This document shows positions 3,191 to 18,119 of a stretch of DNA of 64,000 nt, in pieces. The stretch lies in IMG/VR virus record IMGVR_UViG_3300046167_000825, positions 1-64,000 of that record; one strand, 5' to 3'. Numbering within the stretch: position 1 is the first letter of the stretch; the number at the start of each line of letters is the position of its first letter. Position numbers and translations under genes: made by a program. A model generated the notes under the pieces. That model was not told the origin of the DNA, made no database searches, and saw only the letters and a list, made by a program, of their open reading frames with translations.

Positions 3191-3374
3191 GGCTTGGATG
3201 TGTAGTTACAACCCTTTAGTTCGTTATCCTAGTTCGCTAGGATTTTTTTGTGCTTAAAAACCCTAGAAAAATCAAGGGGTTATCCTAGTTCGGTTTTCAA
3301 AGAAACCCCTTTTGGGGTTGTATGCCTTTTGAGTTTTCGTATACTTCCCACACAATACATAGGAGGTATTACTT

Positions 3375-4734: not shown

Positions 4735-6132
4735 ATGAGTGGACACAACTGGACATCAGCCAATGAGTACCCACATTCTCCCGTCAATGCCACAGTAATG
4801 ACTGGTTTTGAAGTGGGGATTGTGGATCTACGGTGGGATGACCCCTCCATTCTTCAAACAGCCCCCACTGCTTATGGTGGGAAGACCAATGCTGGTTGGG
4901 ATATCGTTGGGTGTAATGTCTATCGGAGTGACGATGGTGATAGAGGCCCTTTCAAGAGATTGAATCAGCACCCCGTTTCCTCTTTGTTCTGGCGTGATTT
5001 CACGGAGAATATCTGGATCGAGCAAGAGAAGGTCGATTTGTCTGATTGGGTTTCGAGAGGTTATGGTGAACTGGGTGCGTGGCAGTTCAAACTAAAGAAT
5101 CCTCCCATTGTTAAGAAGGGTGGTCAGAAGATTCTTGCAAATGCTCCCAATGATGTGGTTCTTCGGATTAACGGTCAGATTGTTCCTATCCATAGTGTGG
5201 ATGGTGCAAGTGGTCTCGTGACATTGATAGACCAAAAAACTTATGATATCGCTAGAGAGAAACATATTGATCCCATACTCCCTAGCGAAACAGACTCCGT
5301 AGAGATTTCTTATTGGAGGAATGTCAATGTGGTTCGTCACAACTTAGATTACAAACATAAGGTGTGGTATCGAATAACAACAGTCGCCAAGAGTGAGGAC
5401 ACCCCTTCTGGTTTGGTTGAAACTCCCTTGAGTTTTTGTGAGCCAGTGTCTATGGTTCAGAAAGAGCCTTTGGACTACATTTGGAAAGAAGCCCTCAGAC
5501 GAAATAACTGGATACTAGAGCAAGGTGGGGAACGAGTGAAACTGTTCGTGAGGAAACGGTCGGGTATCACTTGTCATTGTGATTATGATGAAACCCTCAT
5601 GGAAATGTCCAAACAACCCTCCAATAGGTGTGAGCGTTGCTTCGGCACGGGCTTTGTGGGTGGTTACGAAGGCCCCTACGAGGTCATTGTGTGTCCAGAC
5701 GATGGTGAAGTGAATATTGTTCAGACAGATAGGGGTCGAAATAAAGAACACACTTACGAGTGTTGGATAGGCCCCACACCGAGTGTTTCTCAGAAGGATT
5801 TCATCTTGAAACAAGACGGAGATAGATACTCCATTGGGGCAGTTCGCAGACCTTCAAACAGAGGGAATCTATTGAATCAGTTCTTCACTATCGGATACCT
5901 TGATGAGGCAGATATTCGATACCGAGTTCCGATTACGGGTATCAGTGAGAATACTTTCCCCGAAACTAGATACCCCACCGAACTACAATATGAGGAACAC
6001 AATAAAGAAGTCCCTTATCCAGTTGGTGCAGACAATCCTCAGTCGAATCCTCAGATCACCCAAAAAGAAAACATTCCAGATGAGCGAGAGAAAAGAGGTC
6101 GCACGCCCGTTTGGGAAAACCAGAATTATTGA
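4735..6132 (+). CDS. Probable neck/head-completion structural protein with Zn-binding Cys cluster
   Basis: FN3-like N-terminus; a domain shared with the sheath repeats; CHC...CERCFGTGFVGGY; position at the start of a structural operon. Confidence 0.5.
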   Translation: MSGHNWTSANEYPHSPVNATVMTGFEVGIVDLRWDDPSILQTAPTAYGGKTNAGWDIVGCNVYRSDDGDRGPFKRLNQHPVSSLFWRDFTENIWIEQEKVDLSDWVSRGYGELGAWQFKLKNPPIVKKGGQKILANAPNDVVLRINGQIVPIHSVDGASGLVTLIDQKTYDIAREKHIDPILPSETDSVEISYWRNVNVVRHNLDYKHKVWYRITTVAKSEDTPSGLVETPLSFCEPVSMVQKEPLDYIWKEALRRNNWILEQGGERVKLFVRKRSGITCHCDYDETLMEMSKQPSNRCERCFGTGFVGGYEGPYEVIVCPDDGEVNIVQTDRGRNKEHTYECWIGPTPSVSQKDFILKQDGDRYSIGAVRRPSNRGNLLNQFFTIGYLDEADIRYRVPITGISENTFPETRYPTELQYEEHNKEVPYPVGADNPQSNPQITQKENIPDEREKRGRTPVWENQNY

Positions 6133-6134
6133 TT

Positions 6135-6569
6135 ATGCCAAGTGTTTTAATTGAAATACCCTTTAAGGAATATGCCGAACTGTTTTCATTGAAGTCTGAC
6201 GATTTCATGAAGGTTTACGCAGAGGTTAAACGAGATTTGTTGTTTGAAACTCGAAGAGAGTTCGACAATTATCGGGTTCGTGCTGGCGTGACACACAAGG
6301 GCTTCATCAAAACCATTTATATATCAGATCAGATGCACACGCTCCGAGTCATGATTCCCGATGACATCCCCTCCCCCTCAAACAAGAAGATTATAACGCT
6401 AACCAAGTTCGGTTCGCCTATGGTAGTCACAATGCCTCTCACAACAGACAAAATGTGGATATCCAATGGTATCACGAAGAACACTTTCTTAACTCGCATA
6501 GAAACAAAATACACGGCTATTTTAATCGGGGAACTCTATAGGGAGAAAGTTCGGAGGACATTCCTATGA
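6135..6569 (+). CDS. Hypothetical protein (possible neck component)
   Basis: ATG 2 bp after upstream stop; 4-bp overlap with next gene. Confidence 0.6.
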   Translation: MPSVLIEIPFKEYAELFSLKSDDFMKVYAEVKRDLLFETRREFDNYRVRAGVTHKGFIKTIYISDQMHTLRVMIPDDIPSPSNKKIITLTKFGSPMVVTMPLTTDKMWISNGITKNTFLTRIETKYTAILIGELYREKVRRTFL

Positions 6570-7201
6570 GAATCGCTAGAGTAAAATGTTTGAGAGGTCG
6601 TCTTTCAATTCCTTCGTTGGGTATCACCCTTTTGAAAGGGCAAGAGCATGAGTTCACCTCAACTCAGTTCGCTCAAAGTGTAGAGTTACAGAAGGCATCT
6701 CAAGTCAATCAAATCACCGTACAATGGAGAACATCAATGTCTAAGAAACAAGTTCGCCCCCGACATGTGTCGGCATCTAGGGGAGTCAAAGCGAATCCTC
6801 AAAAAAGAGCCACCCCACCAGCAACCTCAAACGAGGCATTGAAGCAAACAATCCAACGAGAAGTCGCCCAGATGAAGAATGAACTGGTAGGGGAAATAGC
6901 CAAGATGCTAGGGGGGATGACGGGTGGTGTTAATGCCGAACAGATGGCTACCATGATAAACCAAGCCGTTGCCTCCAACATGCCCTCAACCATTACCACT
7001 TCGGGGAAACCCCAAGAATCTTCGGAATCTTCCATGATTGATGATTCCGAACCGTTATACATCCCCTCTGGTTTAACAAACACGGGTAATATACAAGGTG
7101 GTTCTGTGTCTGTGTCTTCTGTTAGTTCGGAGGATACCTCTTTAGAGGATGCTGCTTCAGCACTCCGTGCCATGAAGAAAAACCGAAGAAAAAACAAATA
7201 A
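6566..7201 (+). CDS. Hypothetical protein upstream of actin; S/T-rich linker and basic C-terminal helix
   Basis: GGAGG RBS, coupled to neighbours; ends SLEDAASALRAMKKNRRKNK. Confidence 0.7.
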   Translation: MRIARVKCLRGRLSIPSLGITLLKGQEHEFTSTQFAQSVELQKASQVNQITVQWRTSMSKKQVRPRHVSASRGVKANPQKRATPPATSNEALKQTIQREVAQMKNELVGEIAKMLGGMTGGVNAEQMATMINQAVASNMPSTITTSGKPQESSESSMIDDSEPLYIPSGLTNTGNIQGGSVSVSSVSSEDTSLEDAASALRAMKKNRRKNK

Positions 7202-7216
7202 TAAGGAGAACTAATT

Positions 7217-8221
7217 ATGTCGAAAAAACAACTAGGTGTCGGTCTTGATATCGGAACAATGAACATTGTGTCTGCCCGTCAAGGCGATAGTAAAAAAACC
7301 CTCATCTCTCGTATCCGAGATGCCTTCCTTGACCTCGATCTCTCAGCAAAGAAGATGTTGAAACTCTCTGGTGTGGATTTCATCGAACGAGAAGATGAGA
7401 TTCTTATTATTGGAGATGCCGCTCTCGAAACAGCCAATGTCTTTGGTCAAGAAGCAAGACGACCTTTATCACAAGGTTTGATCAGTGCTGGTGAGATTGA
7501 TGCCATTGAAGTACTTGGTATTCTCATCAAGCATGTGTTGGGCGAACCAGCAGAAGAAAATGAGGTTTGCTATTTCAGTATTCCCGCTGCCCCCGTTGAT
7601 GACCTTAGCCGTGATGTTATCTACCACGAGGGAGTCTTTGAGAGAATCGTTTCTGAGTGTGGTTACGAGGCTGTGGCTAGTAATGAGGCGATGGCTATTA
7701 TCTTCTCCGAATGTGCCAAAGAAGGTTTCAGTGGATTGAGTATTTCTTTTGGTGCTGGTATGTGTAACATTGCCCTTGCTGTTAACACCATCGAAGGTCT
7801 TTGCTTTTCGGTGGCACGGGGTGGTGATTGGATTGACGCTGGGTCAGCCAGAGCAACTGGTTCGACACGCTCGAAGATTGTGACCGTGAAGGAAAGTGGG
7901 ATTGATCTTCTTAATCCCAAGACTCGTGAGGAAGAAGCCCTTGCTGTCTATTACAAATCCCTCATTGAGTACTGCTTGAAGAATGTAGCAAACGAGTTCA
8001 AGAAGATTAAAGGGCGTTTCAGTTTGCCAAAGCCCATCCCTTTGGTGATTAGTGGGGGAACTAGCAAGGCTGGTGGTTTCGTGGAGTTCTTCCAACAAGT
8101 CTTTGAGAAGCAACGCAAACGCTTCCCTATCGAAGTGTCCGAAATCCGTCACGCCAAAGACCCTCTCAATGCCGTTGCTCTAGGTCTTTGTATCCAAGCC
8201 CAAACTGAATACGATGAATAA
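7217..8221 (+). CDS. Actin-like ATPase (MreB/MamK/ParM/FtsA superfamily)
   Basis: Phosphate-1 VGLDIGTMNI, connect-1 SNEAMA, phosphate-2 SISFGAGMCN, adenosine VISGGTS, connect-2 DPLNAVALG; 334 aa. Confidence 0.9.
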   Translation: MSKKQLGVGLDIGTMNIVSARQGDSKKTLISRIRDAFLDLDLSAKKMLKLSGVDFIEREDEILIIGDAALETANVFGQEARRPLSQGLISAGEIDAIEVLGILIKHVLGEPAEENEVCYFSIPAAPVDDLSRDVIYHEGVFERIVSECGYEAVASNEAMAIIFSECAKEGFSGLSISFGAGMCNIALAVNTIEGLCFSVARGGDWIDAGSARATGSTRSKIVTVKESGIDLLNPKTREEEALAVYYKSLIEYCLKNVANEFKKIKGRFSLPKPIPLVISGGTSKAGGFVEFFQQVFEKQRKRFPIEVSEIRHAKDPLNAVALGLCIQAQTEYDE

Positions 8222-8222
8222 A

Positions 8223-8339
8223 ATGACGGATGAACAAATAAAAAAAATAGATGCCCGAGTCAAAAAAGGCGAGGCAACCGAAGAAGACATTGAGATTCTT
8301 ACGGATTACTTCAAACTATTTATGGATGAACTAGGCTGA
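8223..8339 (+). CDS. 38-aa mini-ORF not in the ORF track (MTDEQIKKIDARVKKGEATEEDIEILTDYFKLFMDELG)
   Basis: Starts 1 bp after the actin stop; TGATG overlap with the next gene. Confidence 0.65.
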   Translation: MTDEQIKKIDARVKKGEATEEDIEILTDYFKLFMDELG

Positions 8340-9526
8340 TGTATTACCAACTGACCAGTGCCATCAAGAGAAGAATGATTCTCGAACTACGGAGATATTG
8401 GGCTTCACACCCCAAGTTTTCTGACCTTGTAGATAACATACAAGGGAAGTACTCTTTTAGAGAACGACCTCAACATGGGATTATCGTTAAGACGGGTTCA
8501 GCCACGAAGGTGAATCTGTCTGCCGATAACTTTCAAGGCACGGTTTGGGCACATTGCACCCTCACTTTGATTGATAACTATGCTGGGACAGCCATTGAAT
8601 GGGTGAGGGAAGACCCTTTCGCCATTAAGAAGCACGGCAAGTTCCCCTCAAAGGCTGGTGTCTATTATATCGAACTAACAGCAGACAATGAGTTCTATGT
8701 CGATCCTCTCCTTGATATTTATCGTGAGCGACTAGATCAGTTGTCCTCAACACAGTTCTCATTACAGAACACACCCCTTGACGGAACTTTAAGAATCTAC
8801 GAGATGCCTAGCAATCTCGTGATGTATGAAACAACGAACTACACCTTTGATAAAGCAACCAACATTGTCACTCTAACCAAACCCCTCCCAGAAGGTTTGT
8901 CTCTGTCTGCTGATTATCGTTACCCCCTTGAATCGAGAGGCCCCTTCCCGATTAAGGCGAACTATTCCAATCGAACTGCCATTGAAGGGGTCATCATTGC
9001 TTTTGGGAGAAGATGCACGAAGGGTGACCGAATGGCGATAATGATTTCCCCTTACCGTGAACCCGTTGCTTTGGAATACGGTGGTCGATGGGAACTGTCA
9101 TTGGACTTCGATATTATCGCTAGAGATGTTTTCGCTCAACAAGAGATATCGGATTCGACTGTCATGTATCTGTGGGCTGTCTCAAGGTCATACCTCGTTA
9201 ATGAAGGTATCAATGTCACGGATGTTTCTCTCGGAGGGGAAAGCGAGGAGGCATACGACCAAACGGGTGACGACTACTATTATATGTCGAACTTCAGTAT
9301 GACAGTCGAAACCGATTGGGCAGTCTATGTTCCCCTCACAGCAAGAATCCGTAGGGTTCTTCCAGAAGACCTCTCTGAAAATCGGAAATCGGCTGGGATG
9401 ACAGACGAAGAATTAGCCACTGAAACCCTAGAAACTCGTTTGAAAGTCGTGGAAGAACTTGGTCTCCGAGAACTGTCTGATCCCTACTTCAAAGGGAAGG
9501 GTGTCAACTTTGAAACCATCAAATAA
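8339..9526 (+). CDS. Probable tail terminator/completion protein with inserted beta domain
   Basis: Operon context; beta-strand C-terminus (WELSLDFDIIARD...NFSMTVETDW) resembles tail-completion folds. Confidence 0.45.
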   Translation: MYYQLTSAIKRRMILELRRYWASHPKFSDLVDNIQGKYSFRERPQHGIIVKTGSATKVNLSADNFQGTVWAHCTLTLIDNYAGTAIEWVREDPFAIKKHGKFPSKAGVYYIELTADNEFYVDPLLDIYRERLDQLSSTQFSLQNTPLDGTLRIYEMPSNLVMYETTNYTFDKATNIVTLTKPLPEGLSLSADYRYPLESRGPFPIKANYSNRTAIEGVIIAFGRRCTKGDRMAIMISPYREPVALEYGGRWELSLDFDIIARDVFAQQEISDSTVMYLWAVSRSYLVNEGINVTDVSLGGESEEAYDQTGDDYYYMSNFSMTVETDWAVYVPLTARIRRVLPEDLSENRKSAGMTDEELATETLETRLKVVEELGLRELSDPYFKGKGVNFETIK

Positions 9527-9532
9527 ACGGTT

Positions 9533-9580
9533 GCGGTTGTAGTTTTAAGAGAGATCCGTATAGGTGTTGCAATCAACATT
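9533..9580 (+). promoter_or_regulatory. Repeated early-type promoter cassette, copy 1
   Basis: GCGGTTGTAGTTTTAAGAGAGATCCGTATA...CAATCAACATT; 26/30 identical to copies 2 and 3. Confidence 0.75.
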
Positions 9581-9597
9581 TATATTCGGAGGCTATT

Positions 9598-10002
9598 ATG
9601 ACTACTTTACAACAACTTGACCAAGCGACACTCCAACGCATTGACGAGGTTATGACTCGTCACTGCTTGGAGATGGCTACCAAGATGGCATCCCCTACTT
9701 GGGAGCGACATATCTATTGGGTGATGACTCTTCAACACTTCTGTGAGTGGGAAGACATCGACAATAACTTTGGTCGCAATCAGTCGATTCTCGGATACCC
9801 AGAGAACATCTATTTTCATCATCAAGGGTGGCTTCACTTTGTGGGTGAGAACAGTTCCCACAAGTTCTTTGCTCAGAAACGGGCGAAGGGGTGGGTTCTC
9901 TTCTCTTTGTGTTGCGACAATGACGAGGTGGGTTTTCATCAAATCACAAGCCCCTCAGCCTATACTGGGAAACTAGGTTGGGATATCGACATCCAAGCCT
10001 AG
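9598..10002 (+). CDS. Hypothetical protein
   Basis: GGAGG RBS behind the repeated promoter. Confidence 0.7.
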   Translation: MTTLQQLDQATLQRIDEVMTRHCLEMATKMASPTWERHIYWVMTLQHFCEWEDIDNNFGRNQSILGYPENIYFHHQGWLHFVGENSSHKFFAQKRAKGWVLFSLCCDNDEVGFHQITSPSAYTGKLGWDIDIQA

Positions 10003-10015
10003 ACTCATTCTGAGT

Positions 10016-10218
10016 GTGTGAAACCAATTATCCAATCTGCAACTTTTTGAACATTTATGCAAAAAACCAAACAATTTCTGCAAGAAAAATACATAAATCC
10101 GTATTTTTCTGCAAGAAAATGAAAAAAACTGCAAAAATCCGTCAAAAGTTGCAGAAAAATCCATATTTCTGCAAAAAAACCTAAAAAGTTGCAGATCGGA
10201 TTTGGGATTGTTTCACAC
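10016..10218. repeat. AT-rich element with terminal inverted repeats and eight phased TGCA cores
   Basis: GTGTGAAAC/GTTTCACAC and 18/19-bp IR (10030-10048 vs 10183-10201); TGCA at 10038, 10058, 10079, 10110, 10130, 10150, 10170, 10190. Confidence 0.85.
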
Positions 10219-10253
10219 CAAAAGTTCTGTATATTTTTCATAAGGAGTTTAAT

Positions 10254-10706
10254 ATGAAAATAGTTAATCACTGTGACAGATGTTCTCGTGAACTCTGTAC
10301 ATGGCAAATGAGCCGTTTCAATACGCAAGACTGTTGCTTTCGCTGTATCGATCTTGAGAAGAAGCACCCTCGTTATCAAGAGGCGTATGAGGCTGAACTT
10401 GCAGAGGTGACTCGTGGGAATCACAACTACAAGGGCATAGGTCTTCCTCGTGACCTTGAAATCCAATCAAAGGTCACTCTCAGCCCCCAGTTCTACTTGG
10501 AGTCCAATGAGCAACTCTTGTTTCTCGGGAACTATTCGGGGGTTGATGCTTATTTTAATCCCGACAAAGGGGAACTTGTCCATAGAGTTCACTCTAGGAC
10601 TCGAACAATTTCTTTGTCTGTTGTTAAAGCCTTGCCGACAGACTCCAACCAATACATCTATTGGGAAGACACCCTACACCTCTTGAAATTATGTGATCTA
10701 GACTAG
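10254..10706 (+). CDS. Hypothetical protein with N-terminal Cys cluster (CDRC...CCFRC)
   Basis: TAAGGAG RBS; MSRFNTQDCCFRC...NYKGIGLP. Confidence 0.7.
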   Translation: MKIVNHCDRCSRELCTWQMSRFNTQDCCFRCIDLEKKHPRYQEAYEAELAEVTRGNHNYKGIGLPRDLEIQSKVTLSPQFYLESNEQLLFLGNYSGVDAYFNPDKGELVHRVHSRTRTISLSVVKALPTDSNQYIYWEDTLHLLKLCDLD

Positions 10707-10759
10707 TGCGGTTGCACTTTTAAGAAAGACCCGTATAAGAAGTGTAAGCAATCAACATT
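10707..10759 (+). promoter_or_regulatory. Repeated early-type promoter cassette, copy 2
   Basis: TGCGGTTGCACTTTTAAGAAAGACCCGTATA...CAATCAACATT; TTGCAC-N16-TATAAG is sigma70-like. Confidence 0.75.
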
Positions 10760-10774
10760 GACTGGGAGGTCATT

Positions 10775-10933
10775 ATGTCTAAGACTGTAAAGCACTATTC
10801 AGAAGCCAAAACCACACGAAGGGAACGAAAGTTCCTCGTGGGCTTTAATCGCTACCACAAGAACTGTGTCAGACGCTTCAACCGTTCTGACCGTCAATCC
10901 ACCAAAGCAACTCTCAAAGCCCTTGTCGGCTGA
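10775..10933 (+). CDS. 52-aa very basic mini-ORF not in the ORF track (MSKTVKHYSEAKTTRRERKF...)
   Basis: GGGAGG RBS directly behind promoter copy 2. Confidence 0.7.
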   Translation: MSKTVKHYSEAKTTRRERKFLVGFNRYHKNCVRRFNRSDRQSTKATLKALVG

Positions 10934-10971
10934 GGGGGTTGCCTCTGGTTGGAGGGGTAAACAGATTCTTG

Positions 10972-10985
10972 ATAATCTGTTTATA
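10972..10985 (+). promoter_or_regulatory. Putative late promoter motif ATAA-N6-TATA
   Basis: ATAAtctgttTATA before the 11008 ORF. Confidence 0.6.
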
Positions 10986-11007
10986 ATAATGAGAGAAAGA
11001 AAGGAGC

Positions 11008-11556
11008 ATGACAATGAAACGACATTTACTGGCTTTGTTAAACCGAACTCGTGGGGGACACATGTTCCACGAGGTGCAGAAGCGAATCAACGGAACTCAA
11101 GACTCTGCTGAAATGAGTGCTCAAGAAATGGAACAATGGTATCGGTTCGTGACCAATGCCGTAGAAGATGCCAAGATGTCAGCACAGAATAATCCTCGTG
11201 GTTTTGGTCGATATGCCCAACGAGTTGCTACTCGATATCTTGAAGCGAGAATTGATATGGATGGCACTTTGAAAGATGCCCCTAACAGTCAAGATTGGTG
11301 GGATGGTGTGAGCAATCTTCTGGCTCAGTACGTTTCAAGAAAAAGGGGTCAGAGAGTTACTGATGTGATTCGTGTAGTTCAACCCAATGGTTTCACACAC
11401 AACTGGGGTGGGGTAGAAATCACACTGATCGAGAATAATGGTCGGGTGGATTTTCTTGTTAATGGGAAGAGCCACGGCACATCTAGGCTAAACGATTCTT
11501 ACACCACCAAGAGAATGGTTACAGTTCTTAAAAAGACCTACAAGATATTTAATTGA
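11008..11556 (+). CDS. Hypothetical two-domain late protein with internal RYAQRVATRYLEA tag
   Basis: AAGGAG RBS; motif shared with other late ORFs. Confidence 0.72.
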   Translation: MTMKRHLLALLNRTRGGHMFHEVQKRINGTQDSAEMSAQEMEQWYRFVTNAVEDAKMSAQNNPRGFGRYAQRVATRYLEARIDMDGTLKDAPNSQDWWDGVSNLLAQYVSRKRGQRVTDVIRVVQPNGFTHNWGGVEITLIENNGRVDFLVNGKSHGTSRLNDSYTTKRMVTVLKKTYKIFN

Positions 11557-11617
11557 AAGAGGGCATCGAACTAATTCGCTTTTCAAGAATCTAAATGACC
11601 CCCGAAAGGGCTGTGGG

Positions 11618-11803
11618 TTATGCCCACAGTGATTCATCCAGCCCGTAGGTCTTATAGATTTCCTCTCCGATTGCCGTTGGTTTCCCCTCAGCATCTGCCC
11701 AACACAGTTCCAAATACAGTGCTTTTTCAAAAGGTGTTAGTTCAGCAGTTGACATGGTCATATATTCGCACCAGTCAATAATGATATTTTTCATTGCAGC
11801 CAT
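11618..11803 (-). CDS. Small hypothetical protein
   Basis: TAGGAG RBS; last gene of a - strand mini-operon. Confidence 0.65.
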   Translation of the reverse strand: MAAMKNIIIDWCEYMTMSTAELTPFEKALYLELCWADAEGKPTAIGEEIYKTYGLDESLWA

Positions 11804-11812
11804 GATAATCTC

Positions 11813-11932
11813 CTATGGGCATCCGTGTATGCCGAATAAATGTGTGATAGTGTGGAAAAAGAAGTGGATGACACCACCAATGACGGGCAGAGAAGCCAGC
11901 CATAGGTAGTATCGAGTGAGTAGTTCTTTCAT
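11813..11932 (-). CDS. 39-aa hydrophobic, His-rich membrane peptide not in the ORF track
   Basis: MKELLTRYYLWLASLPVIGGVIHFFFHTITHLFGIHGCP; fills the gap between flanking - strand genes. Confidence 0.55.
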   Translation of the reverse strand: MKELLTRYYLWLASLPVIGGVIHFFFHTITHLFGIHGCP

Positions 11933-11935
11933 TGG

Positions 11936-12139
11936 TTACCCCCAGTAGTGATGGTCTGTGTCGCCACAAACATATTGATTTGCAAAGCGTTCTTCCAACT
12001 CAGCCAAGTACGCCTCATCACGAGCCTTGTCCTCAGCGAGTTGTTGTTGATATTGTTCGATGTCACGGTCGATTGCCTCTTGAGCATCGACATCGACATT
12101 GTGAATGGTTGGAATGGTTGGAATGGTTTGAACTGTCAT
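11936..12139 (-). CDS. Small acidic coiled-coil protein
   Basis: TAGGAG RBS behind promoter copy 3; TIP-TIP-TI N-terminal micro-repeat. Confidence 0.7.
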   Translation of the reverse strand: MTVQTIPTIPTIHNVDVDAQEAIDRDIEQYQQQLAEDKARDEAYLAELEERFANQYVCGDTDHHYWG

Positions 12140-12171
12140 GATATTCTCCTATGAATGTGATTGACACTATC

Positions 12172-12202
12172 TATACGGGTCTTTCTTAAAAGTGCAACCG
12201 CA
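12172..12202 (-). promoter_or_regulatory. Repeated early-type promoter cassette, copy 3
   Basis: Exact 31-bp reverse complement of copy 2 (10707-10737). Confidence 0.78.
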
Positions 12203-12234
12203 ACAGCCATCAACCTAGAATCTGTTCAGAGGAC

Positions 12235-12261
12235 AAAAAAAATGGGAGGCGAACCTCCCAC
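12235..12261 (-). terminator. Intrinsic terminator (- strand)
   Basis: TGGGAGG-CGAA-CCTCCCA preceded by an A tract, i.e. a UUCG hairpin plus U tract on the - strand. Confidence 0.75.
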
Positions 12262-12280
12262 TCAAACTCTTTCAATATAT

Positions 12281-12463
12281 CTAAGCGATACGGAACATGT
12301 GTCTTTCAGCAAACGACTTGGCATCCTTGAGCGATTTCGCTTTGTGGATGGCAGACCTATCCCCTCTCTTAAAGAACACCACCCACTTGCTAGAAACCTT
12401 TTCAATCTCATATCTACCACAAGTGACACAGAGGTGGATATCCCGTGTTTTCAGCCAAATCAT
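12281..12463 (-). CDS. Small basic hypothetical protein
   Basis: 4-bp overlap with upstream gene. Confidence 0.6.
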   Translation of the reverse strand: MIWLKTRDIHLCVTCGRYEIEKVSSKWVVFFKRGDRSAIHKAKSLKDAKSFAERHMFRIA

Positions 12464-12744
12464 ACACGACCCCCTTGAGAATCCAAGATGGTCTTCTCGG
12501 TGTTGTTGAGAACGGCTCTACCACTCTCTCGCACTTTATTACGAACTTCACGGTAGGTGGGGGCTTTGAGATTGAGGGTGTTATCTCCCTCTGGCGTGTG
12601 GATAACGCACTGTGTTGCGAGACCCTTCTGGGTGAAGGTCATAGACCAACCATCACCATTGACGGTGATGTACTCTTGGGTTGTTTCAATATTGACCGTT
12701 TCTCGGTCATTTGTCTTGTTAATTAAAATATGCTCTAGTTTCAT
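12460..12744 (-). CDS. Hypothetical protein
   Basis: TAAGGAG RBS; CGTATA element upstream. Confidence 0.7.
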   Translation of the reverse strand: MKLEHILINKTNDRETVNIETTQEYITVNGDGWSMTFTQKGLATQCVIHTPEGDNTLNLKAPTYREVRNKVRESGRAVLNNTEKTILDSQGGRV

Positions 12745-12815
12745 GGGTAATACTCCTTATGGGGGGGTGACATCTTTTATACGCAAAGCCAAACATAAAA
12801 CGATCCCTCTTTTGA

Positions 12816-12829
12816 ATAATCCCCTTATA
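12816..12829 (+). promoter_or_regulatory. Putative late promoter motif ATAA-N6-TATA
   Basis: ATAAtcccctTATA. Confidence 0.6.
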
Positions 12830-12853
12830 TATTCTTTGATGTAGGAGAACCTA

Positions 12854-13288
12854 ATGCCCCAATACGAGTTTCAATGTGATGAATGTGGTTTGTTATTCAT
12901 GAAAAAGATGAGTTACGGCAAAGCCAAGTCCATAGATTTCACAGTGGCATGTCAGTGTGGAGTGTCGGTCAGACGGAAGATGACTGCACCCAATTATCAG
13001 TTTTCCCTTACCCCCACCTCCACCGATCCACAAAACACGGGCGTGTATTCATTTGATACAAATGTCGACCGAGTTATTGGAAAGGACTCAGAGGAAAAGT
13101 GGAAAAAAATTGAAAAAAGACAAAAAGAAAAACATTCTCTTTTACGAGACAACCCTAACAAGACTGGCTTTGATATCAGAAGACGACTTGATAACCACTA
13201 CGAAATTGCACCAAGCCAAGAACGCACCGCCTATGAAAAAGGCATGAAGGTTGTGGCTGAGACAAAGAGTAAGGGGAAGAAAATATGA
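12854..13288 (+). CDS. FmdB-family zinc-ribbon protein
   Basis: MPQYEFQCDECG...CQCG...RRKM N-terminus. Confidence 0.8.
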   Translation: MPQYEFQCDECGLLFMKKMSYGKAKSIDFTVACQCGVSVRRKMTAPNYQFSLTPTSTDPQNTGVYSFDTNVDRVIGKDSEEKWKKIEKRQKEKHSLLRDNPNKTGFDIRRRLDNHYEIAPSQERTAYEKGMKVVAETKSKGKKI

Positions 13289-13307
13289 AGTCGATTTCTG
13301 CGTGTCG

Positions 13308-13321
13308 ATAATCGGTCTATA
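13308..13321 (+). promoter_or_regulatory. Putative late promoter motif ATAA-N6-TATA
   Basis: ATAAtcggtcTATA before the tail sheath gene. Confidence 0.62.
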
Positions 13322-13361
13322 AAGTAACCATTTCTGACAGAATACATTATGCGAGGTAAAT

Positions 13362-16300
13362 ATGGCATTCCCAAGTTCAATCTATGCACCCCCAAGTGTT
13401 TACACCAAAACCAATTTTGATTCACCTTTGAGTGGAGCATTGGCTGGTGTGAAGATTCCAGTTCTCATTGGAACGGGTAGCGAAATCTTATCACAACCCG
13501 ATCTTGAGTTAGTTCGAGGTTCTAGTTCTAGTGTCGACCAACAAATTGTCCAAGAAGACATGTCGGGTCGCATTGTGGCTTCTGAGTTGGCTTCGGGAGA
13601 AGTCGTTCTCGGTTCTTATGACGGAACAACAAACCAAGTTCAAGTTCGCAACTTCCCGATAGTCACTGGGGATGGTTCTGGAACAACTACCACCAAACCA
13701 AGCGATGTCAGTGTTTCTCTAAATGGAGAACCCGTTGTTGTTTTGGCTATTGATGGAGCGAAGGGATTATTGACACTTTCTGAATCACCGAAAATGGGAG
13801 ATTCTTTGAAGGTGACCTACTTCTTCAATCGAACTGACACTTTGACAACCGATGAGGTTTCTGCTCAAGTTTCTGAGGATTCTGCTTTGGTTTATCTAGC
13901 GAAGGCTGGAAACTATAAAGTATTCCCATCTTCTTCTGATACTCTCCTTCTGACTGTTGATGGGGTTTCCCTCGTAATAACTCTCGTTGGGGATGCTTCA
14001 AATGAAATCACAGCGGCTTCTCTCGTCACTCAGATTAAGTCTGGTGCTGGGGTGACTTCTCTTGATGCCACAACATACACCAACAACGAAGGGAACACTT
14101 CTGTGGCTCTCTCTGCTGATAAAGAGATTGTTGTTGGTAGTGGTTCTGCAAACTCTTCTCTTGGGTTGTCTGCTGGAACATCGACTGGTCGTAACAAGAC
14201 TTTTTATGTCTTCAATGGCCCTATCGTAGATGGTTCTAACGGCGGTGTTACAACTACTGATGTTGCTGATGTGACTGTCAAGGTAGATGGGGTTCAAGTT
14301 ATTCCGTCTAGCGTTGATGGGTTCTCTCGTGCTGTGACTTTATCTGTGCCACCCGCTAATGGAAGCACTGTCACTATCCAATACTATTTCAACACTTGGC
14401 AAGATACCTTTGATTATCTCGCACACACGGGTATCACTGAAGTGACTCTTGCTGGCTTCTCGGCTGGGAAAGGTGATTTCATTCAAGGTGTTGATTTCAT
14501 TCTTAAAGATGACAAGATTCTTTGGGGAACGGGTGTTATCGTTGAAACTTCTGTTTCATCTCAAGGATATTCTCTGTTTGGTGAGAACCAAATCACAGCG
14601 AACTTGGTTGATAACAAAGGATACCTTGAGCCTTGTTCTGCTGTTGTTGATACTTCCGTATCTCCAGCGAAAGAAAGCAAGACCGAGTTCAGACTTCCTT
14701 TCGTACCAACCACTGGAAATGGTCGTGGAACTCCAATCGGGATTTCATTGTTCCAAACAGTATCTAATGGTCGTATTGATCTCCCAACAAATCGCCCCGA
14801 CCTTGTGAAAGCATATTGGGGATTCTCTATTCAAGACGCTCTTGATCGTGGGGAAGTTTCAGTTCTGTCTGTTGATCATGCAAGTGCTTCTATCACTCTC
14901 CGTGACCCAGTTCCTACTGGTGCTATGGTTTGGGCTACACAGTATTACAATGTCATTCAAGATTCTGAGTACTCTGTTGTTTGTGAAACTGCTGGTGTTT
15001 CTGGTGTGGGGACATACTCCATCTCAGACAAGAGTGGTTCTGGACTTGTTATTCCTCAGTTCGTTGCAAAGAGTGCTGGATTATCTACTGTCACTATCGA
15101 GTTCCCAAGTGGGTCTGAATTGTTGAGTGATGTTCGTTATGAAACACCACACAACACCAAGTCCTTCAGTGGTGCAGTCGAAGAAGAAATCACGGTTACT
15201 TTTTCTGACAAAGCAGCAACTCCAGCGGCACATACTTTCAGTTCGACTGGCGAGTTCGCTTTCATTGACGGACAAAGTGATAGCATTGAGATTACAGTTG
15301 ATGGCGTACCCGCTTCTTCTGCTCTTTCTGCTGTGGCACACCAAGCACACATCACTGGTGCAGAACTCGTTTATGGCGATCCCTCTGCTCAAACAATGAA
15401 TGTTTCTGCTGGTCTCGATGATTCTCTCATTCTCACCGTTGATGGTTTGCAAGTTGATGTCACATTGACCTCTGGTGCTACAGTTGCTATCGGTGATTTG
15501 ATTGACGATATCAATATGGCAGTTGATGGTCAGATTCCTCGATTGACTGGTGCGAGCAAGTTCGTGAGTGCTTACGAGATTACGGCAGACAATAGCGATT
15601 TTACAATCAATGTCGATGCTACTCCTCATGCTATCTCCATTGATCTTGGCTCTTACCCTACGGCTTCTGCTCTTGTGACTAACATCCAATCCAAGATCGA
15701 TGCAATTCCCGCTATCGATAGTGGTGCTGGTACAGATGTCAAAGTTGTTGCGGCAGTTGATTCTTCTGGACATATCTACTTTACTTTTGAGCGAGTGGGT
15801 AATGTTGAGAAAGCGAAACTGACTAGTGCAACTCAATGGTTGAAGCAGTTCGGATTCGATGAGAGCGAACTGTTCATCGGTAATGGTCTTGGTGGTTGGT
15901 TCGCTTGTGCGACATTGGACTCAATGCCAACTGTCGGTGGTGACTCGTACTATGACCGTATCATTCTCCGAAACCGTATTCTCCCAGCAGATAAACTAGG
16001 GGAAGCCCAAGCAAGTATTCAGATTGATGTGACGACAGCCCAAGATATTCTAGGGTTATCTATGGCTCAGTATGGTGAGGCACACGCTACCACTACTGTC
16101 AAACCAGCCTCTCTTGTAGGAGAAATCGGTTTAACTGGCTCACAAGCAACTGGTGATGGTGCATACCCACAAGTGACCTTGTATCCAAGTGGTTCTACCA
16201 ATCCTCAGAACAACATCCTTCTTCTGACTATTGATGGAACAACACACGAGGTTGTCTTCACACAGAAAGACGGAACTGCTTTGACTGAATCTGGTCATGA

Positions 16301-18119
16301 TGTTCCTTTGTCTGACACGGGTCTAAACGAGGGTATCGTTGAGCAAATCAATACTCAAGTTGGTTCTTCCGTTGCTACTGTTGAAGGGTTTGGAATCCGT
16401 ATTTCTTCTCTGTCACAAGGCACAGAATCTTCTGTTATTGTTGGTCAAGGCTCATCGAACTCTATTCTCGGTCTGTTGGATAATCAATCTGCCGAGAGAG
16501 AACTGGTTTCTGTTGGTTGTCTTGCTTCGGCTCTTATTCAGACACCGATAACAGCACATTTCGCTGTTATCACAGACAGTGCTGGGACTGAGTACTTGTA
16601 TATGCAATCAAAGACTTTGGGTGTTTCCTCTAACATCTCTTATTCTGATGGAACATTGAGTCGCATCGGAACGGGTTTCACTGATTCAATCGGTGATGGT
16701 GGTGTTGGTGAAAGTGGTAAGAGTGGTTTTTATGTCACATCCAATATCTCTAATGGTTCTGGTTCGGTTGCTACTTCTTTGTTGAGTGGAACTGGAGTTG
16801 GGCAAGACGGTGTTGTTGGACAAACTTATCGTGACCTCGCAACGGGATTGACATTCACTGTCCTCCCACGGGCGACTGGCGTGAATTACCCCGCTGGTAC
16901 TTTGACTTTCAAAGCGAGCAAAATCGTTACAACTGATGCCAATCTTCCAGTTTCTACTGTGAAGGGTGTGTCTTTGATTGTAGCGAATACCGAAAGCCTT
17001 AACGCTGGGGATTCTGCTTCCGTTGAAACATTCCAACGAAGTGGTGAGCAACCAGAAGTTGGGGACACTTACTACTCGTCTTACAAGTACGCCAAGCAAG
17101 ACTTCACTCCTCGTTTATACACCAAGTTCAATGCAGTTGAGGCTGCCTTCGGTGAACTAGACCCAACAAATCCTCTGACTTTGGCTTGCTATCTAGCGAT
17201 GACCAACGGTTCTATCCTTGTAGGATTGAAACAAGTCAAGAAAGATGAGTTGGTGGTCAATGGTGAATATACACAAGCAAGTGTTGTCGCTTACCGTGAT
17301 GCCATTGATGAAATGGGTGGAACATTCGCTAGTGGAACAACACCAGACATCCTAGTTCCCCTTCGTGGAGATTCTTTGGAACTGTACCAGTACATGGCTC
17401 GTCATGCTAACATCCAATCTTCTATCCGATACAAGTCCGAGCGAACTGTAATCGCTGGGGTTGGTGCTGGAACGAAGCGTAAAGATGTCCAAGCGTGGGC
17501 AACAGCAATCAAGGAAACTCGTTTCCGTTTGTTGTACCCAGATATGGCTTACCTCACCATCACAGATGCTTTCGGGAAAGACCAACGACACCTAGTTGAT
17601 GGAACATTCGTTGCTGCTGCTTGGGCGGGGGCAGTTGTTGCACCCACAAAAGATGTAGCGACACCGTGGACTAACTCAAGAGTCTTCGGATTCGATTCTT
17701 TGGCTCGAACTAGCGATGCCGTTCAGAAGAACCAACTTGCTGTTGCTGGGATTACTGTCCTTGAAGACATCCCAAATGCTCTTAAAGTTCGTCACGGTCT
17801 CACCACTGACATGAGTAACATTGTAACCAAAACACCGACAGTCATTCAGATTGCCGATGAGGTACAACAACTCGCTCGCACTGCTCTCGATTCATTCGTG
17901 GGCGTGAAGTTCCTCCCAAGTATCACTTCTCAAATCGAAGGGAAGTTGGCTATGGTTCTGAAAGAACTTGTCCGTAAAGACATCATCGCTGGTTACACTG
18001 GTATCACTGCCAATGTCAATCCCGATGACCCAACAGTTGCAGAGGTGCAAGCGGCATACCAACCAGTATTCCCATTGTTATACCTCGTAGTGACATTCAA
18101 CCTAAGAGCAAGCCTTTGA
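13362..18119 (+). CDS. Contractile tail sheath protein, very long, with many inserted domains
   Basis: N-terminal YAPPSVY..IPVLIG; C-terminal sheath core (QKNQLAVAGITVLE, VRHGLTTD, LDSFVGVKF, DPTVAEVQAAYQPVFPLLYLVVTF). Confidence 0.9.
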   Translation: MAFPSSIYAPPSVYTKTNFDSPLSGALAGVKIPVLIGTGSEILSQPDLELVRGSSSSVDQQIVQEDMSGRIVASELASGEVVLGSYDGTTNQVQVRNFPIVTGDGSGTTTTKPSDVSVSLNGEPVVVLAIDGAKGLLTLSESPKMGDSLKVTYFFNRTDTLTTDEVSAQVSEDSALVYLAKAGNYKVFPSSSDTLLLTVDGVSLVITLVGDASNEITAASLVTQIKSGAGVTSLDATTYTNNEGNTSVALSADKEIVVGSGSANSSLGLSAGTSTGRNKTFYVFNGPIVDGSNGGVTTTDVADVTVKVDGVQVIPSSVDGFSRAVTLSVPPANGSTVTIQYYFNTWQDTFDYLAHTGITEVTLAGFSAGKGDFIQGVDFILKDDKILWGTGVIVETSVSSQGYSLFGENQITANLVDNKGYLEPCSAVVDTSVSPAKESKTEFRLPFVPTTGNGRGTPIGISLFQTVSNGRIDLPTNRPDLVKAYWGFSIQDALDRGEVSVLSVDHASASITLRDPVPTGAMVWATQYYNVIQDSEYSVVCETAGVSGVGTYSISDKSGSGLVIPQFVAKSAGLSTVTIEFPSGSELLSDVRYETPHNTKSFSGAVEEEITVTFSDKAATPAAHTFSSTGEFAFIDGQSDSIEITVDGVPASSALSAVAHQAHITGAELVYGDPSAQTMNVSAGLDDSLILTVDGLQVDVTLTSGATVAIGDLIDDINMAVDGQIPRLTGASKFVSAYEITADNSDFTINVDATPHAISIDLGSYPTASALVTNIQSKIDAIPAIDSGAGTDVKVVAAVDSSGHIYFTFERVGNVEKAKLTSATQWLKQFGFDESELFIGNGLGGWFACATLDSMPTVGGDSYYDRIILRNRILPADKLGEAQASIQIDVTTAQDILGLSMAQYGEAHATTTVKPASLVGEIGLTGSQATGDGAYPQVTLYPSGSTNPQNNILLLTIDGTTHEVVFTQKDGTALTESGHDVPLSDTGLNEGIVEQINTQVGSSVATVEGFGIRISSLSQGTESSVIVGQGSSNSILGLLDNQSAERELVSVGCLASALIQTPITAHFAVITDSAGTEYLYMQSKTLGVSSNISYSDGTLSRIGTGFTDSIGDGGVGESGKSGFYVTSNISNGSGSVATSLLSGTGVGQDGVVGQTYRDLATGLTFTVLPRATGVNYPAGTLTFKASKIVTTDANLPVSTVKGVSLIVANTESLNAGDSASVETFQRSGEQPEVGDTYYSSYKYAKQDFTPRLYTKFNAVEAAFGELDPTNPLTLACYLAMTNGSILVGLKQVKKDELVVNGEYTQASVVAYRDAIDEMGGTFASGTTPDILVPLRGDSLELYQYMARHANIQSSIRYKSERTVIAGVGAGTKRKDVQAWATAIKETRFRLLYPDMAYLTITDAFGKDQRHLVDGTFVAAAWAGAVVAPTKDVATPWTNSRVFGFDSLARTSDAVQKNQLAVAGITVLEDIPNALKVRHGLTTDMSNIVTKTPTVIQIADEVQQLARTALDSFVGVKFLPSITSQIEGKLAMVLKELVRKDIIAGYTGITANVNPDDPTVAEVQAAYQPVFPLLYLVVTFNLRASL

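What the first reader, a model, noticed from the sequence alone, without database searches (positions are those of the whole stretch)
10016..10218. 200-bp non-coding element with terminal inverted repeats and helically phased TGCA/A-tract repeats
Seen: eight TGCA cores spaced 20, 21, 31, 20, 20, 20 and 20 bp, flanked by A/T tracts (likely bent DNA). The array is bounded by 9-bp and 18/19-bp inverted repeats and is much more AT-rich than its surroundings. No target-site duplication is evident. Inference: an array of binding sites on one helix face, such as a parC-like centromere for the actin 1.8 kb away, a replication origin, or a packaging/nucleoid site.
Basis: partly seen in the sequence, partly recalled or inferred. 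Interest (0 to 1): 0.68.

Follow-up and report, generated by a model that had tools for sequence, protein, structure and literature searches.

The report
Curved repeat array beside phage promoter
The 200-bp element is real: it is one of three strongly bent arrays of a short repeated DNA word in an uncultured marine giant phage. It most likely acts as a docking platform for a phage DNA-binding protein next to a phage-specific promoter, not as a centromere for the nearby actin gene.

Summary
The eight TGCA cores, their spacing, the 9-bp and 18/19-bp inverted repeats and the AT-richness are all there, and no target-site duplication is present.

The real repeat is a longer oriented word, AAAAGTTGCAGA. 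Its exact form occurs 8 times in the 289-kb phage contig, and all 8 lie in three arrays: A1 in the window, A2 near 151.2 kb and A3 near 159.8 kb. These three arrays have the strongest 10-bp A-tract phasing in the whole contig.

All three arrays sit in accessory-gene regions served by a conserved promoter family, called P here. P has 17 sites of the form GGTTGCA-N15-CGTATA, and a phage ECF-type sigma gene lies between A2 and A3.

A1 lies in a 3.3-kb cassette inserted between conserved late genes, and it directly abuts a weakened P-type promoter. Five related marine contigs keep this array-promoter arrangement. Their bending is conserved while the core word changes, and it changes in concert between two array loci of one genome.

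No ParR, ParA, ParB_N, Rep or O-type protein was found. The replication genes lie more than 55 kb from any array. Actin-bearing GC-rich relatives lack such arrays.

Best reading (0.4): a protein-wrapping control array of the P regulon. Rivals: an iteron origin (0.25) and a centromere for the actin (0.1). The binding protein is unknown.

The parts
10016..10218 (.). Array A1: eight phased cores in A-tract DNA, forming a quasi-palindrome
10036..10048 (-). Site 1: the full word in reverse orientation (TCTGCAACTTTTT)
   Evidence: Exact 12-mer hit.
10054..10066 (-). Site 2: a weak site (TTATGCAA). Natural variants carry C at 10057, which gives the consensus TTTCTGCAA
   Evidence: L311.
10075..10087 (-). 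Site 3: TTTCTGCAAG form
   Evidence: (D3).
10106..10118 (-). Site 4: TTTCTGCAAG form. It follows the single 31-bp step, which holds a small hairpin (10084-10109)
   Evidence: (D3, I4).
10126..10138 (-). Site 5: AAACTGCAAAAA form
10144..10156 (+). Site 6: the full word in forward orientation
   Evidence: Exact 12-mer hit.
10166..10178 (-). Site 7: TTTCTGCAAAAAA form
   Evidence: (D2).
10184..10201 (+). Site 8: the terminal unit, the full word followed by GAT-GG-TTT. All three arrays end on the right with this unit
10203..10236 (+). Degenerate P-family promoter abutting the array (-35-like 10206-10212, 15-nt spacer, -10-like 10228-10233). It reads into 10254-10706
   Evidence: PWM score is 13.6 here and 19.7-26.0 at the orthologous place in L311, L304, L306 and L308. 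True P sites score 21.6-37.7.
9535..9562 (+). P-family promoter at the left edge of the cassette. It drives 9598-10002 and reads into the array
9598..10002 (+). Gene upstream of the array (134 aa, no known family). It is kept next to the array in relatives
10254..10706 (+). Gene downstream of the array (150 aa, N-terminal Cys4 zinc ribbon, phrog_27033). It is kept next to the array in relatives
10710..10737 (+). Canonical P-family promoter for a 52-aa basic ORF (10775-10933) and 11008-11556
12172..12199 (-). Canonical P-family promoter on the minus strand, near the right edge of the cassette
9527..12853 (.). Accessory cassette holding A1. It is inserted between the conserved genes 8339-9526 and 12854-13288
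   Evidence: Synteny across 79 loci. The cassette is present in L304-L311.
7217..8221 (+). Actin-like gene (Pfam Volactin). It is context only and not shown to be linked to the array

Best explanation
A1 is one of three copies of a lineage-specific, intrinsically curved array of short oriented DNA words. It belongs to an uncultured marine giant phage.

Shown:
- The word repeats every 20 bp (two helical turns), with A-tracts every 10.1 bp, so all cores lie on one face of a strongly bent segment of 160-200 bp.
- The exact word exists nowhere else in the 289-kb contig.
- All three arrays lie in accessory-gene regions that are dense in one conserved promoter family, P (GGTTGCA-N15-CGTATA). A phage ECF-type sigma gene lies between A2 and A3.
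- A1 ends 10 bp before a weakened P-type promoter for the next gene. This array-promoter junction is kept in related phages with the same 37-38 nt register.
- The bending is conserved while the core word turns over, and it turns over in step at two array loci of one genome.

Inferred:
- Several copies of one phage-encoded, sequence-specific protein bind the cores in successive major grooves on the inner face. The flanking A-tract minor grooves also face inward, so the DNA wraps around the protein stack.
- The resulting nucleoprotein complex controls transcription of the P regulon. At A1 it activates or gates the sub-consensus promoter at 10203-10236, and it may block read-through from the promoter at 9535-9562.
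- At A2 and A3 it acts at a distance, by looping, insulation or silencing, on neighbouring P promoters around the sigma gene.

The binding protein has not been identified.
For: Specificity:
- All 8 exact 12-mers in the contig fall within the three arrays.
- TGCA density in the three arrays ranks 1st to 3rd in the contig.
- A-tract phasing in the three arrays also ranks 1st to 3rd.

Promoter context:
- There are 17 P sites, all with a 15-nt spacer.
- Ten of them lie at 143-165 kb around A2 and A3, and three lie in the A1 cassette.
- The sigma gene at 155283-155906 matches TIGR02937 sigma70-ECF above its cut-off.

Junction with a promoter:
- The P-type site directly right of A1 scores 13.6 in the window and 19.7-26.0 in L311, L304, L306 and L308.
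- The last core lies 37-38 nt from the -10 element in all of them.

Conservation:
- L311 keeps the same 8 cores and the same spacing.
- L304-L308 and L309 keep the 10.0-10.2 bp phasing but use other cores.
- In the 238-kb contig, the A1-locus array (L306) and the A3-locus array (L312) share the same mixed TGCA plus TGACA word set. This points to a common trans-acting factor.
- A population variant at 10057 restores a consensus site.
- The close relative G002 has two arrays of a different 21-bp word, each just upstream of a promoter-like box.
Against: - No DNA-binding protein has been identified. The two genes that always flank A1 have no family hit and no DNA-binding fold match.
- A2 and A3 do not abut a promoter. 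They lie about 130-210 bp from the next one, with terminator-like hairpins in between.
- The orientation of the A3-locus array and its distance to the promoter differ between lineages.
- Eight sites over 200 bp is large for a bacterial or phage operator.
- L313 lacks the A3-locus array altogether.
- The promoter next to A1 has lost two key consensus positions in this genome, so it may be inactive.
- There are no expression or binding data.
Confidence: 0.4

Rival explanations
1. The arrays are iteron-type replication origins, one of several in the genome. An initiator binds the phased words, wraps the bent DNA and opens it. Transcription from the P promoter 440-720 bp upstream of each array helps activation, as at lambda ori, at T4 and T7 origins or in ColE1.
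For: - The arrays have 5-8 words at 20-21 bp spacing in AT-rich bent DNA.
- Several arrays per genome carry the same word.
- The word diverges quickly between close relatives, as ori and initiator pairs do in lambdoid phages (own knowledge; background in PMC7466680).
- Each G000 array lies downstream of a P promoter in the direction of transcription.
- Long non-coding gaps of 250-700 bp are kept in a compact genome.
Against: - No Rep_3 or O-type initiator was found.
- The flanking proteins show no DNA-binding fold.
- The DnaB-like helicase (84 kb) and the family A polymerase (95 kb) lie more than 55 kb from any array.
- The cumulative GC skew does not turn at any of the arrays; it dips across the minus-strand gene blocks, one of which (147-167 kb) contains A2 and A3, so it follows gene orientation.
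- The arrays fall in the least stable 0.4-5% of windows, but they are not the minima and have no separate unwinding element.
- The words occur in mixed orientation, whereas origin iterons are usually direct repeats.
- In G002, a strong terminator shields array a1 from upstream transcription.
Confidence: 0.25
2. The arrays are centromere-like anchors for the phage actin, that is, parC-like sites dispersed over a very large genome. An adaptor protein coats each array and couples it to actin filaments that position or move the phage DNA.
For: - The size, the 20-bp unit and the predicted wrapping resemble type II centromeres such as R1 parC and pSK41 parC (own knowledge).
- The actin is the only cytomotive NTPase found. 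No ParA or tubulin was detected.
- Every low-GC relative examined has one array within 5 kb of the actin gene. The array lies downstream in G000 and L304-L311, and 3.2-4.6 kb upstream in G001, G002 and G003.
- In G001 and G002 the gene just before that array carries a ParB/Srx-like motif.
Against: - The actin with its neighbours (4735-6132, 8339-9526, 12854-13288, 13362-18119) is conserved in about 67 contigs, next to tail-like genes.
- Arrays are absent within 6 kb in all relatives with 72% actin identity or less. They are also absent from four long GC-rich contigs.
- A1 sits in a mobile cassette, not in the actin operon.
- No ParR-like gene lies next to the actin.
- The ParB-like motif has no Pfam, NCBIfam or PDB support and has no counterpart in G000.
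- A2 and A3 lie more than 140 kb away, in sigma and promoter-rich DNA.
Confidence: 0.1
3. The arrays are a structural or decoy site for a host protein, such as a nucleoid protein, RNA polymerase alpha or sigma, which binds bent A-tract DNA carrying -35-like hexamers. Alternatively they are a packaging recognition site.
For: - The cores resemble -35 hexamers. G000 has TTGCAG, and L304-L308 and L312 have TTGACA.
- Each core follows an A-tract, as an UP element would (own knowledge).
- The P -35 block shares GTTGCA with the word in G000.
- P1 pac is a site of about 160 bp with seven hexamers (own knowledge).
Against: - The core word differs between close relatives (G001, G002, L309), which a fixed host target would not allow.
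- No link between the word and the -35 block is seen in G001 or G002.
- Three copies per genome is unlike a pac site.
- No terminase gene was shown to lie nearby.
Confidence: 0.1
4. The element is a miniature transposable element (MITE) with terminal inverted repeats.
For: The element has terminal inverted repeats of 9 bp and 18/19 bp. Three copies exist.
Against: - There is no target-site duplication.
- The three copies share only the repeated word and the terminal unit. Their length, internal order and ends differ.
- The 9-bp arms are absent from A2 and A3, and from L304-L308.
- The orthologous position is kept across lineages.
Confidence: 0.02

Closest known systems
Operator or upstream-activator arrays in bent DNA next to phage promoters, for example phi29 p4/p6 at the A2c-A2b-A3 region and lambda OL/OR with looping (own knowledge)
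   Same: Both have several phased sites for one protein in intrinsically bent DNA next to a promoter. Both have more than one array per genome, and the word and its protein are expected to co-vary.
   Different: This element has 5-8 sites over 160-200 bp, in mixed orientation. Two of the three arrays do not touch a promoter. The promoter class is ECF-sigma-like. No regulator gene is known.
Iteron replication origins, for example lambda ori with O protein, SPP1 oriL/oriR and P4 ori/crr (own knowledge; PMC7466680 for O-iteron complexes)
   Same: Both have units of about 20 bp, A-tract bending, wrapping around the binding protein, fast divergence of the word between relatives, and several arrays per genome.
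   Different: Here there is no initiator gene in or beside the array, no distinct unwinding element and no nearby replication genes. The words are in both orientations.
Type II partition centromeres, R1 parC and pSK41 parC (own knowledge)
   Same: Both are arrays of about 160-200 bp made of 10-20-bp units that wrap around an adaptor protein, and an actin-like gene is present in the genome.
   Different: This array is not upstream of the actin gene. No ParR-like gene is present. The array is not co-conserved with the actin, and there are three dispersed copies in promoter-rich accessory DNA.
PeSL mobile promoter cassettes of T4-type phages (PMC2839356, PMC4122927)
   Same: The P promoters are near-identical copies that bound small accessory-gene cassettes in variable regions. 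The A1 cassette carries one at its left edge and another about 650 bp inside its right edge.
   Different: This comparison applies to the P promoters, not to the array itself. The array is a separate module, and no counterpart is described for PeSLs in those papers' abstracts.

Membership tests
ParMRC-type centromere (parC) | The array lies directly upstream of the actin (parM) gene and overlaps its promoter | tested here: not met
   The array lies 1.8 kb downstream of the actin gene, beyond 8339-9526 and 9598-10002, and inside an inserted cassette.
ParMRC-type centromere (parC) | A small adaptor (ParR, ribbon-helix-helix) is encoded next to the actin | tested here: not met
   The neighbours 6111-6569, 6566-7201, 8339-9526, 9598-10002 and 10254-10706 have no Pfam hit, and the three on the array side also have no PHROG function. 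8339-9526 has no NCBIfam hit. The models of 9598-10002 and 10254-10706 show no ribbon-helix-helix fold.
ParMRC-type centromere (parC) | The array is co-conserved with the actin across relatives | tested here: not met
   None of the actin loci with 72% identity or less (about 60) has a phased array within 6 kb. G004, G006, G008 and G009 have none in 140-370 kb each. All low-GC relatives do have one within 5 kb, at two different positions.
ParMRC-type centromere (parC) | The adaptor binds the array and the filament end | not testable with these tools
   This needs EMSA or pull-down experiments.
Iteron-type replication origin | Tandem units of about 17-22 bp phased on one helix face | tested here: met
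   The spacing is 20/21 bp, and 31 bp once. G001 and G002 have 21-bp direct repeats.
Iteron-type replication origin | A cognate initiator gene lies in or beside the array | tested here: not met
   The contig has no Rep_3 or Phage_rep_O. The flanking genes have no known family or DNA-binding fold. The contig is estimated to be 66% complete.
Iteron-type replication origin | An adjacent easily melted element, or a stability minimum | tested here: inconclusive
   The arrays fall in the least stable 0.4-5% of windows but are not the contig minima.
Iteron-type replication origin | A strand-composition switch at the site | tested here: not met
   The cumulative GC skew follows gene orientation and does not turn at 10 kb.
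Iteron-type replication origin | Autonomous or phage-dependent replication of the cloned site | not testable with these tools
   This needs an experiment.
Promoter-linked operator or activator array | The sites lie next to a promoter in a fixed register | tested here: met
   This holds for A1: a P-type site lies at 10203-10236, with 37-38 nt from the last core to the -10 element in G000, L311, L304, L306 and L308. It does not hold for A2 and A3, which lie 130-210 bp from the next promoter.
Promoter-linked operator or activator array | A cognate regulator is identified | tested here: not met
   No candidate with a DNA-binding domain lies next to any array. The weak hits are a WGR domain left of A3 and a recombinase-like HTH (E 0.003) left of A2.
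MITE or transposon end | Target-site duplication and many near-identical copies | tested here: not met
   There is no duplication at the ends. There are three copies, alike only in the repeated word.
Structured RNA gene | A match to a curated RNA family | tested here: not met
   The only hit is a sub-threshold match to a plant microRNA precursor model on A3 (41 bits against a threshold of 80). It is caused by the palindrome.

The most novel reading that the evidence does not exclude
The arrays are dispersed centromere-like anchors. A still unknown adaptor couples them to the phage's conserved actin-like filament so that a genome of 290 kb or more is positioned or moved inside the cell. This would be a phage DNA-positioning system built on actin rather than on PhuZ-type tubulin. 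A second novel reading has similar odds: the arrays are landing pads of -35-like half-promoters that hold the phage ECF-type sigma or RNA polymerase close to its regulon.
Probability: 0.1. Interest if true: 0.85.

Novelty: new variant of a known kind. Interest (0 to 1): 0.5.

Why it matters
Giant uncultured marine phages are known almost only from their protein genes, and their cis-acting DNA signals are largely unmapped. This work defines two linked signal classes in one such phage lineage:
- a 17-member promoter family, ECF-sigma-like in form, found in a genome that also encodes an ECF-type sigma gene;
- a family of extremely bent repeat arrays whose core word changes between relatives but changes in step at two array loci of one genome.

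That pattern marks a specificity pair between a protein and its site, of the kind that sets immunity, incompatibility or regulatory identity between competing phages. It also gives a concrete DNA bait for fishing out the unknown binding protein. Finally, it separates the array from the conserved phage actin, which narrows what that actin may do.

Tried and rejected
- A single 14-nt word searched in IMG/VR gave only chance single hits.
- A two-word pattern mostly hit coding Glu-Val-Ala-Glu repeats. The one exception was an unrelated GC-rich contig.
- BLAST against deposited phage records gave no relative for 8000-12000 apart from a 163-bp weak hit.
- The sigma-70 consensus promoter scan found no promoter-like site at A1 or A3; its two hits in the A2 region were at chance level.
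- No tRNA gene was found in the 20-kb stretch that holds A2 and A3, and no RNA family reached its curated threshold at any of the three arrays.
- The box CAAGAATCTA to the right of A2 and A3 looked like a shared promoter element. It turned out to be a 9-mer that is over-represented across the whole contig.
- The match between the array word and the -35 block of the P promoters (GTTGCA) was tested in G001 and G002 and did not hold.
- A G002 'TTTCGGTA' box family is only loosely defined, so it was not relied on.
- The ParB/Srx-like motif in the gene before the G001 and G002 arrays has no Pfam, NCBIfam or PDB support and has no counterpart in G000.
- The protein atlas gave nothing useful for 9598-10002 or 10254-10706.
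- AlphaFold models of both proteins (pLDDT 80 and 76) matched no solved fold at E below 0.1.
- Contigs from four public marine runs showed the array unchanged apart from two substitutions. Because these were contigs, they give no starts, ends or depth. The loose ends at 10050 and 10196 are assembly cross-links to A3 and A2.
- A 21-nt periodic hit at 112160 is a coding repeat. A repeat at G006 351650 is a different element of about 70 bp.
- Not used: the large representative protein search, complex prediction, and any alternative genetic code.

Full report
SOURCE. The window is the first 64 kb of a 289,014-bp IMG/VR virus record (G000). The record is classed as linear and CheckV puts it at 66% complete. 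Near-identical sequence is held by more than 20 seawater or marine metagenome runs from about 20 studies. The genome has 44.7% GC and very large ORFs, and almost all genes are on one strand. It encodes a DnaB-like helicase (84.1 kb), a family A DNA polymerase (94.7 kb) and an ECF-type sigma factor at 155283-155906 (TIGR02937, 64.8 bits against a cut-off of 42.9). It is an uncultured marine giant phage.

TGCA lies at 10038, 10058, 10079, 10110, 10130, 10150, 10170 and 10190, giving spacings of 20, 21, 31, 20, 20, 20 and 20. With 2.25 TGCA per kb in the contig, 0.45 are expected per 200 bp. Eight are seen, which is the densest such window in 289 kb.

The 9-bp inverted repeat is exact. The 18/19 repeat is 10030-10048 against 10183-10201 and lies within 36-nt arms. 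The whole element folds as one long imperfect hairpin when taken as a single strand (z = -7.9). GC is about 0.29. No target-site duplication flanks it.

A Fourier measure of AAA/TTT positions peaks at 10.1 bp. It ranks this element first of all 180-bp windows in the contig (17.8; median 3.2; 99.9th percentile 14.5). Strong intrinsic curvature is therefore a sound inference, though it has not been measured.

2. WHAT THE REPEAT REALLY IS.

The unit is an oriented word, AAAAGTTGCAGA. A weaker form is TTTCTGCAA, which contains the reverse of TTGCAGA. Both orientations are present.

The exact 12-mer occurs 8 times in the contig, and every copy lies in one of three arrays:
- A1 at 10036-10195;
- A2 at about 151183-151321;
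- A3 at about 159702-159862.

The three arrays are also the three best windows for TGCA density and for A-tract phasing. Each ends on the right with the same terminal unit, which is the word followed by GAT-GG-TTT. A1 and A3 are quasi-palindromes. A2 holds a central 11-bp hairpin.

In each 20-bp unit, A-tracts sit about half a turn to either side of the core. Their minor grooves therefore face the same side as the core's major groove. This geometry is what one expects when DNA wraps around proteins bound at the cores. That step is inference from the sequence.

3. GENOMIC SETTING.

The actin-like gene (7217-8221, Pfam Volactin, E 2.6e-71) has relatives in 79 IMG/VR loci. About 67 of these share the order 4735-6132, actin, 8339-9526, (12854-13288), 13362-18119.

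In three of the closest IMG/VR relatives (L160, L161 and L201, with 87-88% actin identity), the homologues of 8339-9526 and 12854-13288 are 240-520 bp apart. In the window they are 3.3 kb apart. The stretch 9527-12853, which holds A1, is therefore an inserted accessory cassette.

Searching for what marks such cassettes uncovered a conserved promoter family, called P here. Its form is tGCGGTTG(C/T)A, exactly 15 nt, CGTATA, then a conserved leader and a ribosome-binding site. There are 17 sites. The CGTATA -10 element is of the kind used by ECF sigma factors such as B. subtilis SigW (own knowledge).
- Ten sites lie at 143-165 kb around A2, A3 and the sigma gene.
- Three lie in the A1 cassette (9535-9562 +, 10710-10737 +, 12172-12199 -).
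- One further site lies in the window at 3316-3343.

Near-identical promoters that bound shuffled cassettes recall the PeSL elements of T4-type phages (PMC2839356, PMC4122927).

Each G000 array lies 440-720 bp downstream, in the direction of transcription, of a P promoter and after one or two small genes. The order at each array is:
- promoter at 9557, gene 9598-10002, then A1;
- promoter at 152069, two paralogous genes, A2, then terminator-like hairpins;
- promoter at 160317, one gene, A3, a terminator, then the promoter at 159470.

4. RELATIVES.

The word is absent from G001-G004 and G006-G010. However, the low-GC relatives carry arrays of the same build with other words.
- G002 has five 21-bp direct repeats of AAAAAGTGCA-N7-ACAC at two loci.
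- G001 and G003 have six or seven 21-bp repeats with GGTACA in place of GTGCA, at the locus syntenic with the second G002 array.
- The GC-rich relatives G004, G006, G008 and G009 (140-370 kb each) have none.

The two genes that flank A1 have homologues that remain neighbours in other marine contigs. Loci L311, L304/305, L306/307, L308 and L309 all keep the same order. That order is actin, 8339-9526 homologue, sometimes a 150-aa gene, 9598-10002 homologue, a gap of about 245-275 bp, then the 10254-10706 homologue. The gap is the orthologous array:
- L311 has the same eight cores and the same spacing.
- L304-L308 have five TGCA cores (spacings 11, 62, 20, 40) interleaved with TTGACA/TGTCAA cores.
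- L309 has CTGTCGAAA-type cores.
- All of them keep 10.0-10.2 bp A-tract phasing (amplitude 16.5-21.3).

At the A3 locus the picture varies:
- L314 keeps the array, the terminator and the P promoter.
- L313 lacks the array and the adjacent small gene.
- L312 comes from the same 238-kb contig as L306. It has an array with the same mixed TGCA plus TGACA word set as L306, in the other orientation and about 380 bp from the promoter.

The arrays of one genome therefore change their word together. This is the signature of a shared trans-acting binder.

In public runs, the array is unchanged except at 9954 and 10057. The change at 10057 turns the one weak site into the consensus.

5. THE PROMOTER JUNCTION.

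A weight matrix built from the 17 P sites finds a P-type site directly right of A1 (10203-10236) with the family's 15-nt spacer. It scores 13.6 in the window and 19.7-26.0 at the same place in L311, L304, L306 and L308. True sites score 21.6-37.7. The last core lies 37-38 nt from the -10 element in all of these.

In the window, two key positions of the site have drifted: GGTTG has become GATTG and CGTATA has become TGTATA. A2 and A3 share the terminal unit up to the point where this promoter would begin, and then they diverge.

6. TESTS OF THE SPECIFIC IDEAS.

Centromere. No ParA, ParB_N or tubulin is present. No ParR-like gene lies next to the actin. The array is not co-conserved with the actin. 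One caveat remains: every low-GC relative has one array within 5 kb of the actin gene, at two non-homologous positions.

Origin. No Rep_3 or O-type initiator was found. The skew shows no turning point at the arrays. The arrays are not the stability minima. The replication genes are far away.

MITE. There is no target-site duplication, and the copies are alike only in the word.

RNA gene. No family matches. 10-bp A-tract phasing is a property of duplex DNA, not of RNA (inference).

Flanking proteins. They have no known family, and the models match no DNA-binding fold.

7. VERDICT.

Shown: this is a real, non-random, strongly phased repeat array. It is one of three in the genome and is specific to a low-GC marine subclade. 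It sits in P-promoter cassettes, abuts a P-type promoter, and has conserved bending with a core word that evolves in concert.

Inferred: a phage-encoded protein binds the cores and wraps the DNA. The most likely role is control of transcription in the P regulon (0.4). An iteron origin (0.25) and an actin centromere (0.1) remain open, and a host-factor or packaging site is less likely (0.1). The binder and the function need experiments.

The kind of element, a phased protein-binding array, is known. This family, its setting and its link to an ECF-like phage promoter set were not found described in the papers searched.

Noticed in passing
window 3316-3343, 9535-9562, 10710-10737, 12172-12199; G000 108.9, 143.1, 149.8, 152.1, 156.8, 159.0, 159.5, 160.3, 161.3, 163.0, 164.5, 176.2 and 206.0 kb: A 17-member promoter family: tGCGGTTG(C/T)A, exactly 15 nt, CGTATA, then a conserved leader (TGTAAGCAATCA) and a ribosome-binding site. 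It looks like an ECF-sigma promoter. A 207-aa sigma70-ECF gene lies at G000 155283-155906. The family bounds accessory cassettes much as PeSLs do.
   Followed up: partly
G000 whole contig; in the window e.g. 11584, 7013, 29524: The 9-mer CAAGAATCT is the commonest 9-mer in the contig. It occurs 108 times (55 on the plus strand, 53 on the minus), about 50 times the random expectation, and many copies fall inside long ORFs. The closest relative examined, G002, has one copy in 148 kb. CGAACTAGA occurs 54 times. This is unexplained.
   Followed up: partly
window 44263-45960; G000 167872, 173668, 276050; L160:511-1047; L248:17940-18945: Otherwise unrelated proteins share an N-terminal peptide, LRNKxIRLAHxNPxLRxHLLPLL. 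It looks like a targeting or processing signal.
   Followed up: no
L160:511-1047 and L248:18463-18945: In G001 and G002, the gene just before the array near the actin carries a ParB/Srx-like motif (DGSYTILDGSSTYANAK). It has no Pfam, NCBIfam or PDB sequence support and no counterpart in G000.
   Followed up: partly
window 4735-18119 and 79 IMG/VR loci: The actin-like gene (Pfam Volactin) sits in a conserved block with 4735-6132, 8339-9526 and the 1585-aa DUF2460-like protein. The block is found in about 67 giant-phage contigs of 42-66% GC. The setting suggests a virion or late-function role rather than plasmid-type partition.
   Followed up: partly
L160:1499-2674: An AIPR (abortive-infection-type) gene with its own terminator is inserted directly beside the G001 array. 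It is absent from G002.
   Followed up: no
L135:9880-10130 (G005, 61% GC): An unrelated GC-rich viral contig carries an AT-rich array of 21-bp units (AAAAATTGCAAAAAGTTGCAG, 4-5 copies). It lies next to the start of a divergently transcribed gene. No proteins are shared with G000.
   Followed up: partly
window 10050, 10196, 10707-10745; L310 end: Public assemblies break or cross-link at the arrays and at the P promoters. The loose ends at 10050 and 10196 match A3 and A2, and those at 10707-10745 match another P copy. Short-read contigs of this phage are therefore likely to be fragmented or mis-joined at these repeats.
   Followed up: partly
L007:6399-6599 and 6607-6930 (G000 151398-151929): Two tandem paralogous small genes (50% identity) lie between a P promoter and A2. 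The gene before A3 ends with a similar YEL motif, but homology is not established.
   Followed up: partly
G006 351650-351900: A GC-rich relative has a hairpin-containing unit of about 35 bp repeated four times at about 70-bp spacing in non-coding DNA. This is a different kind of repeat.
   Followed up: no
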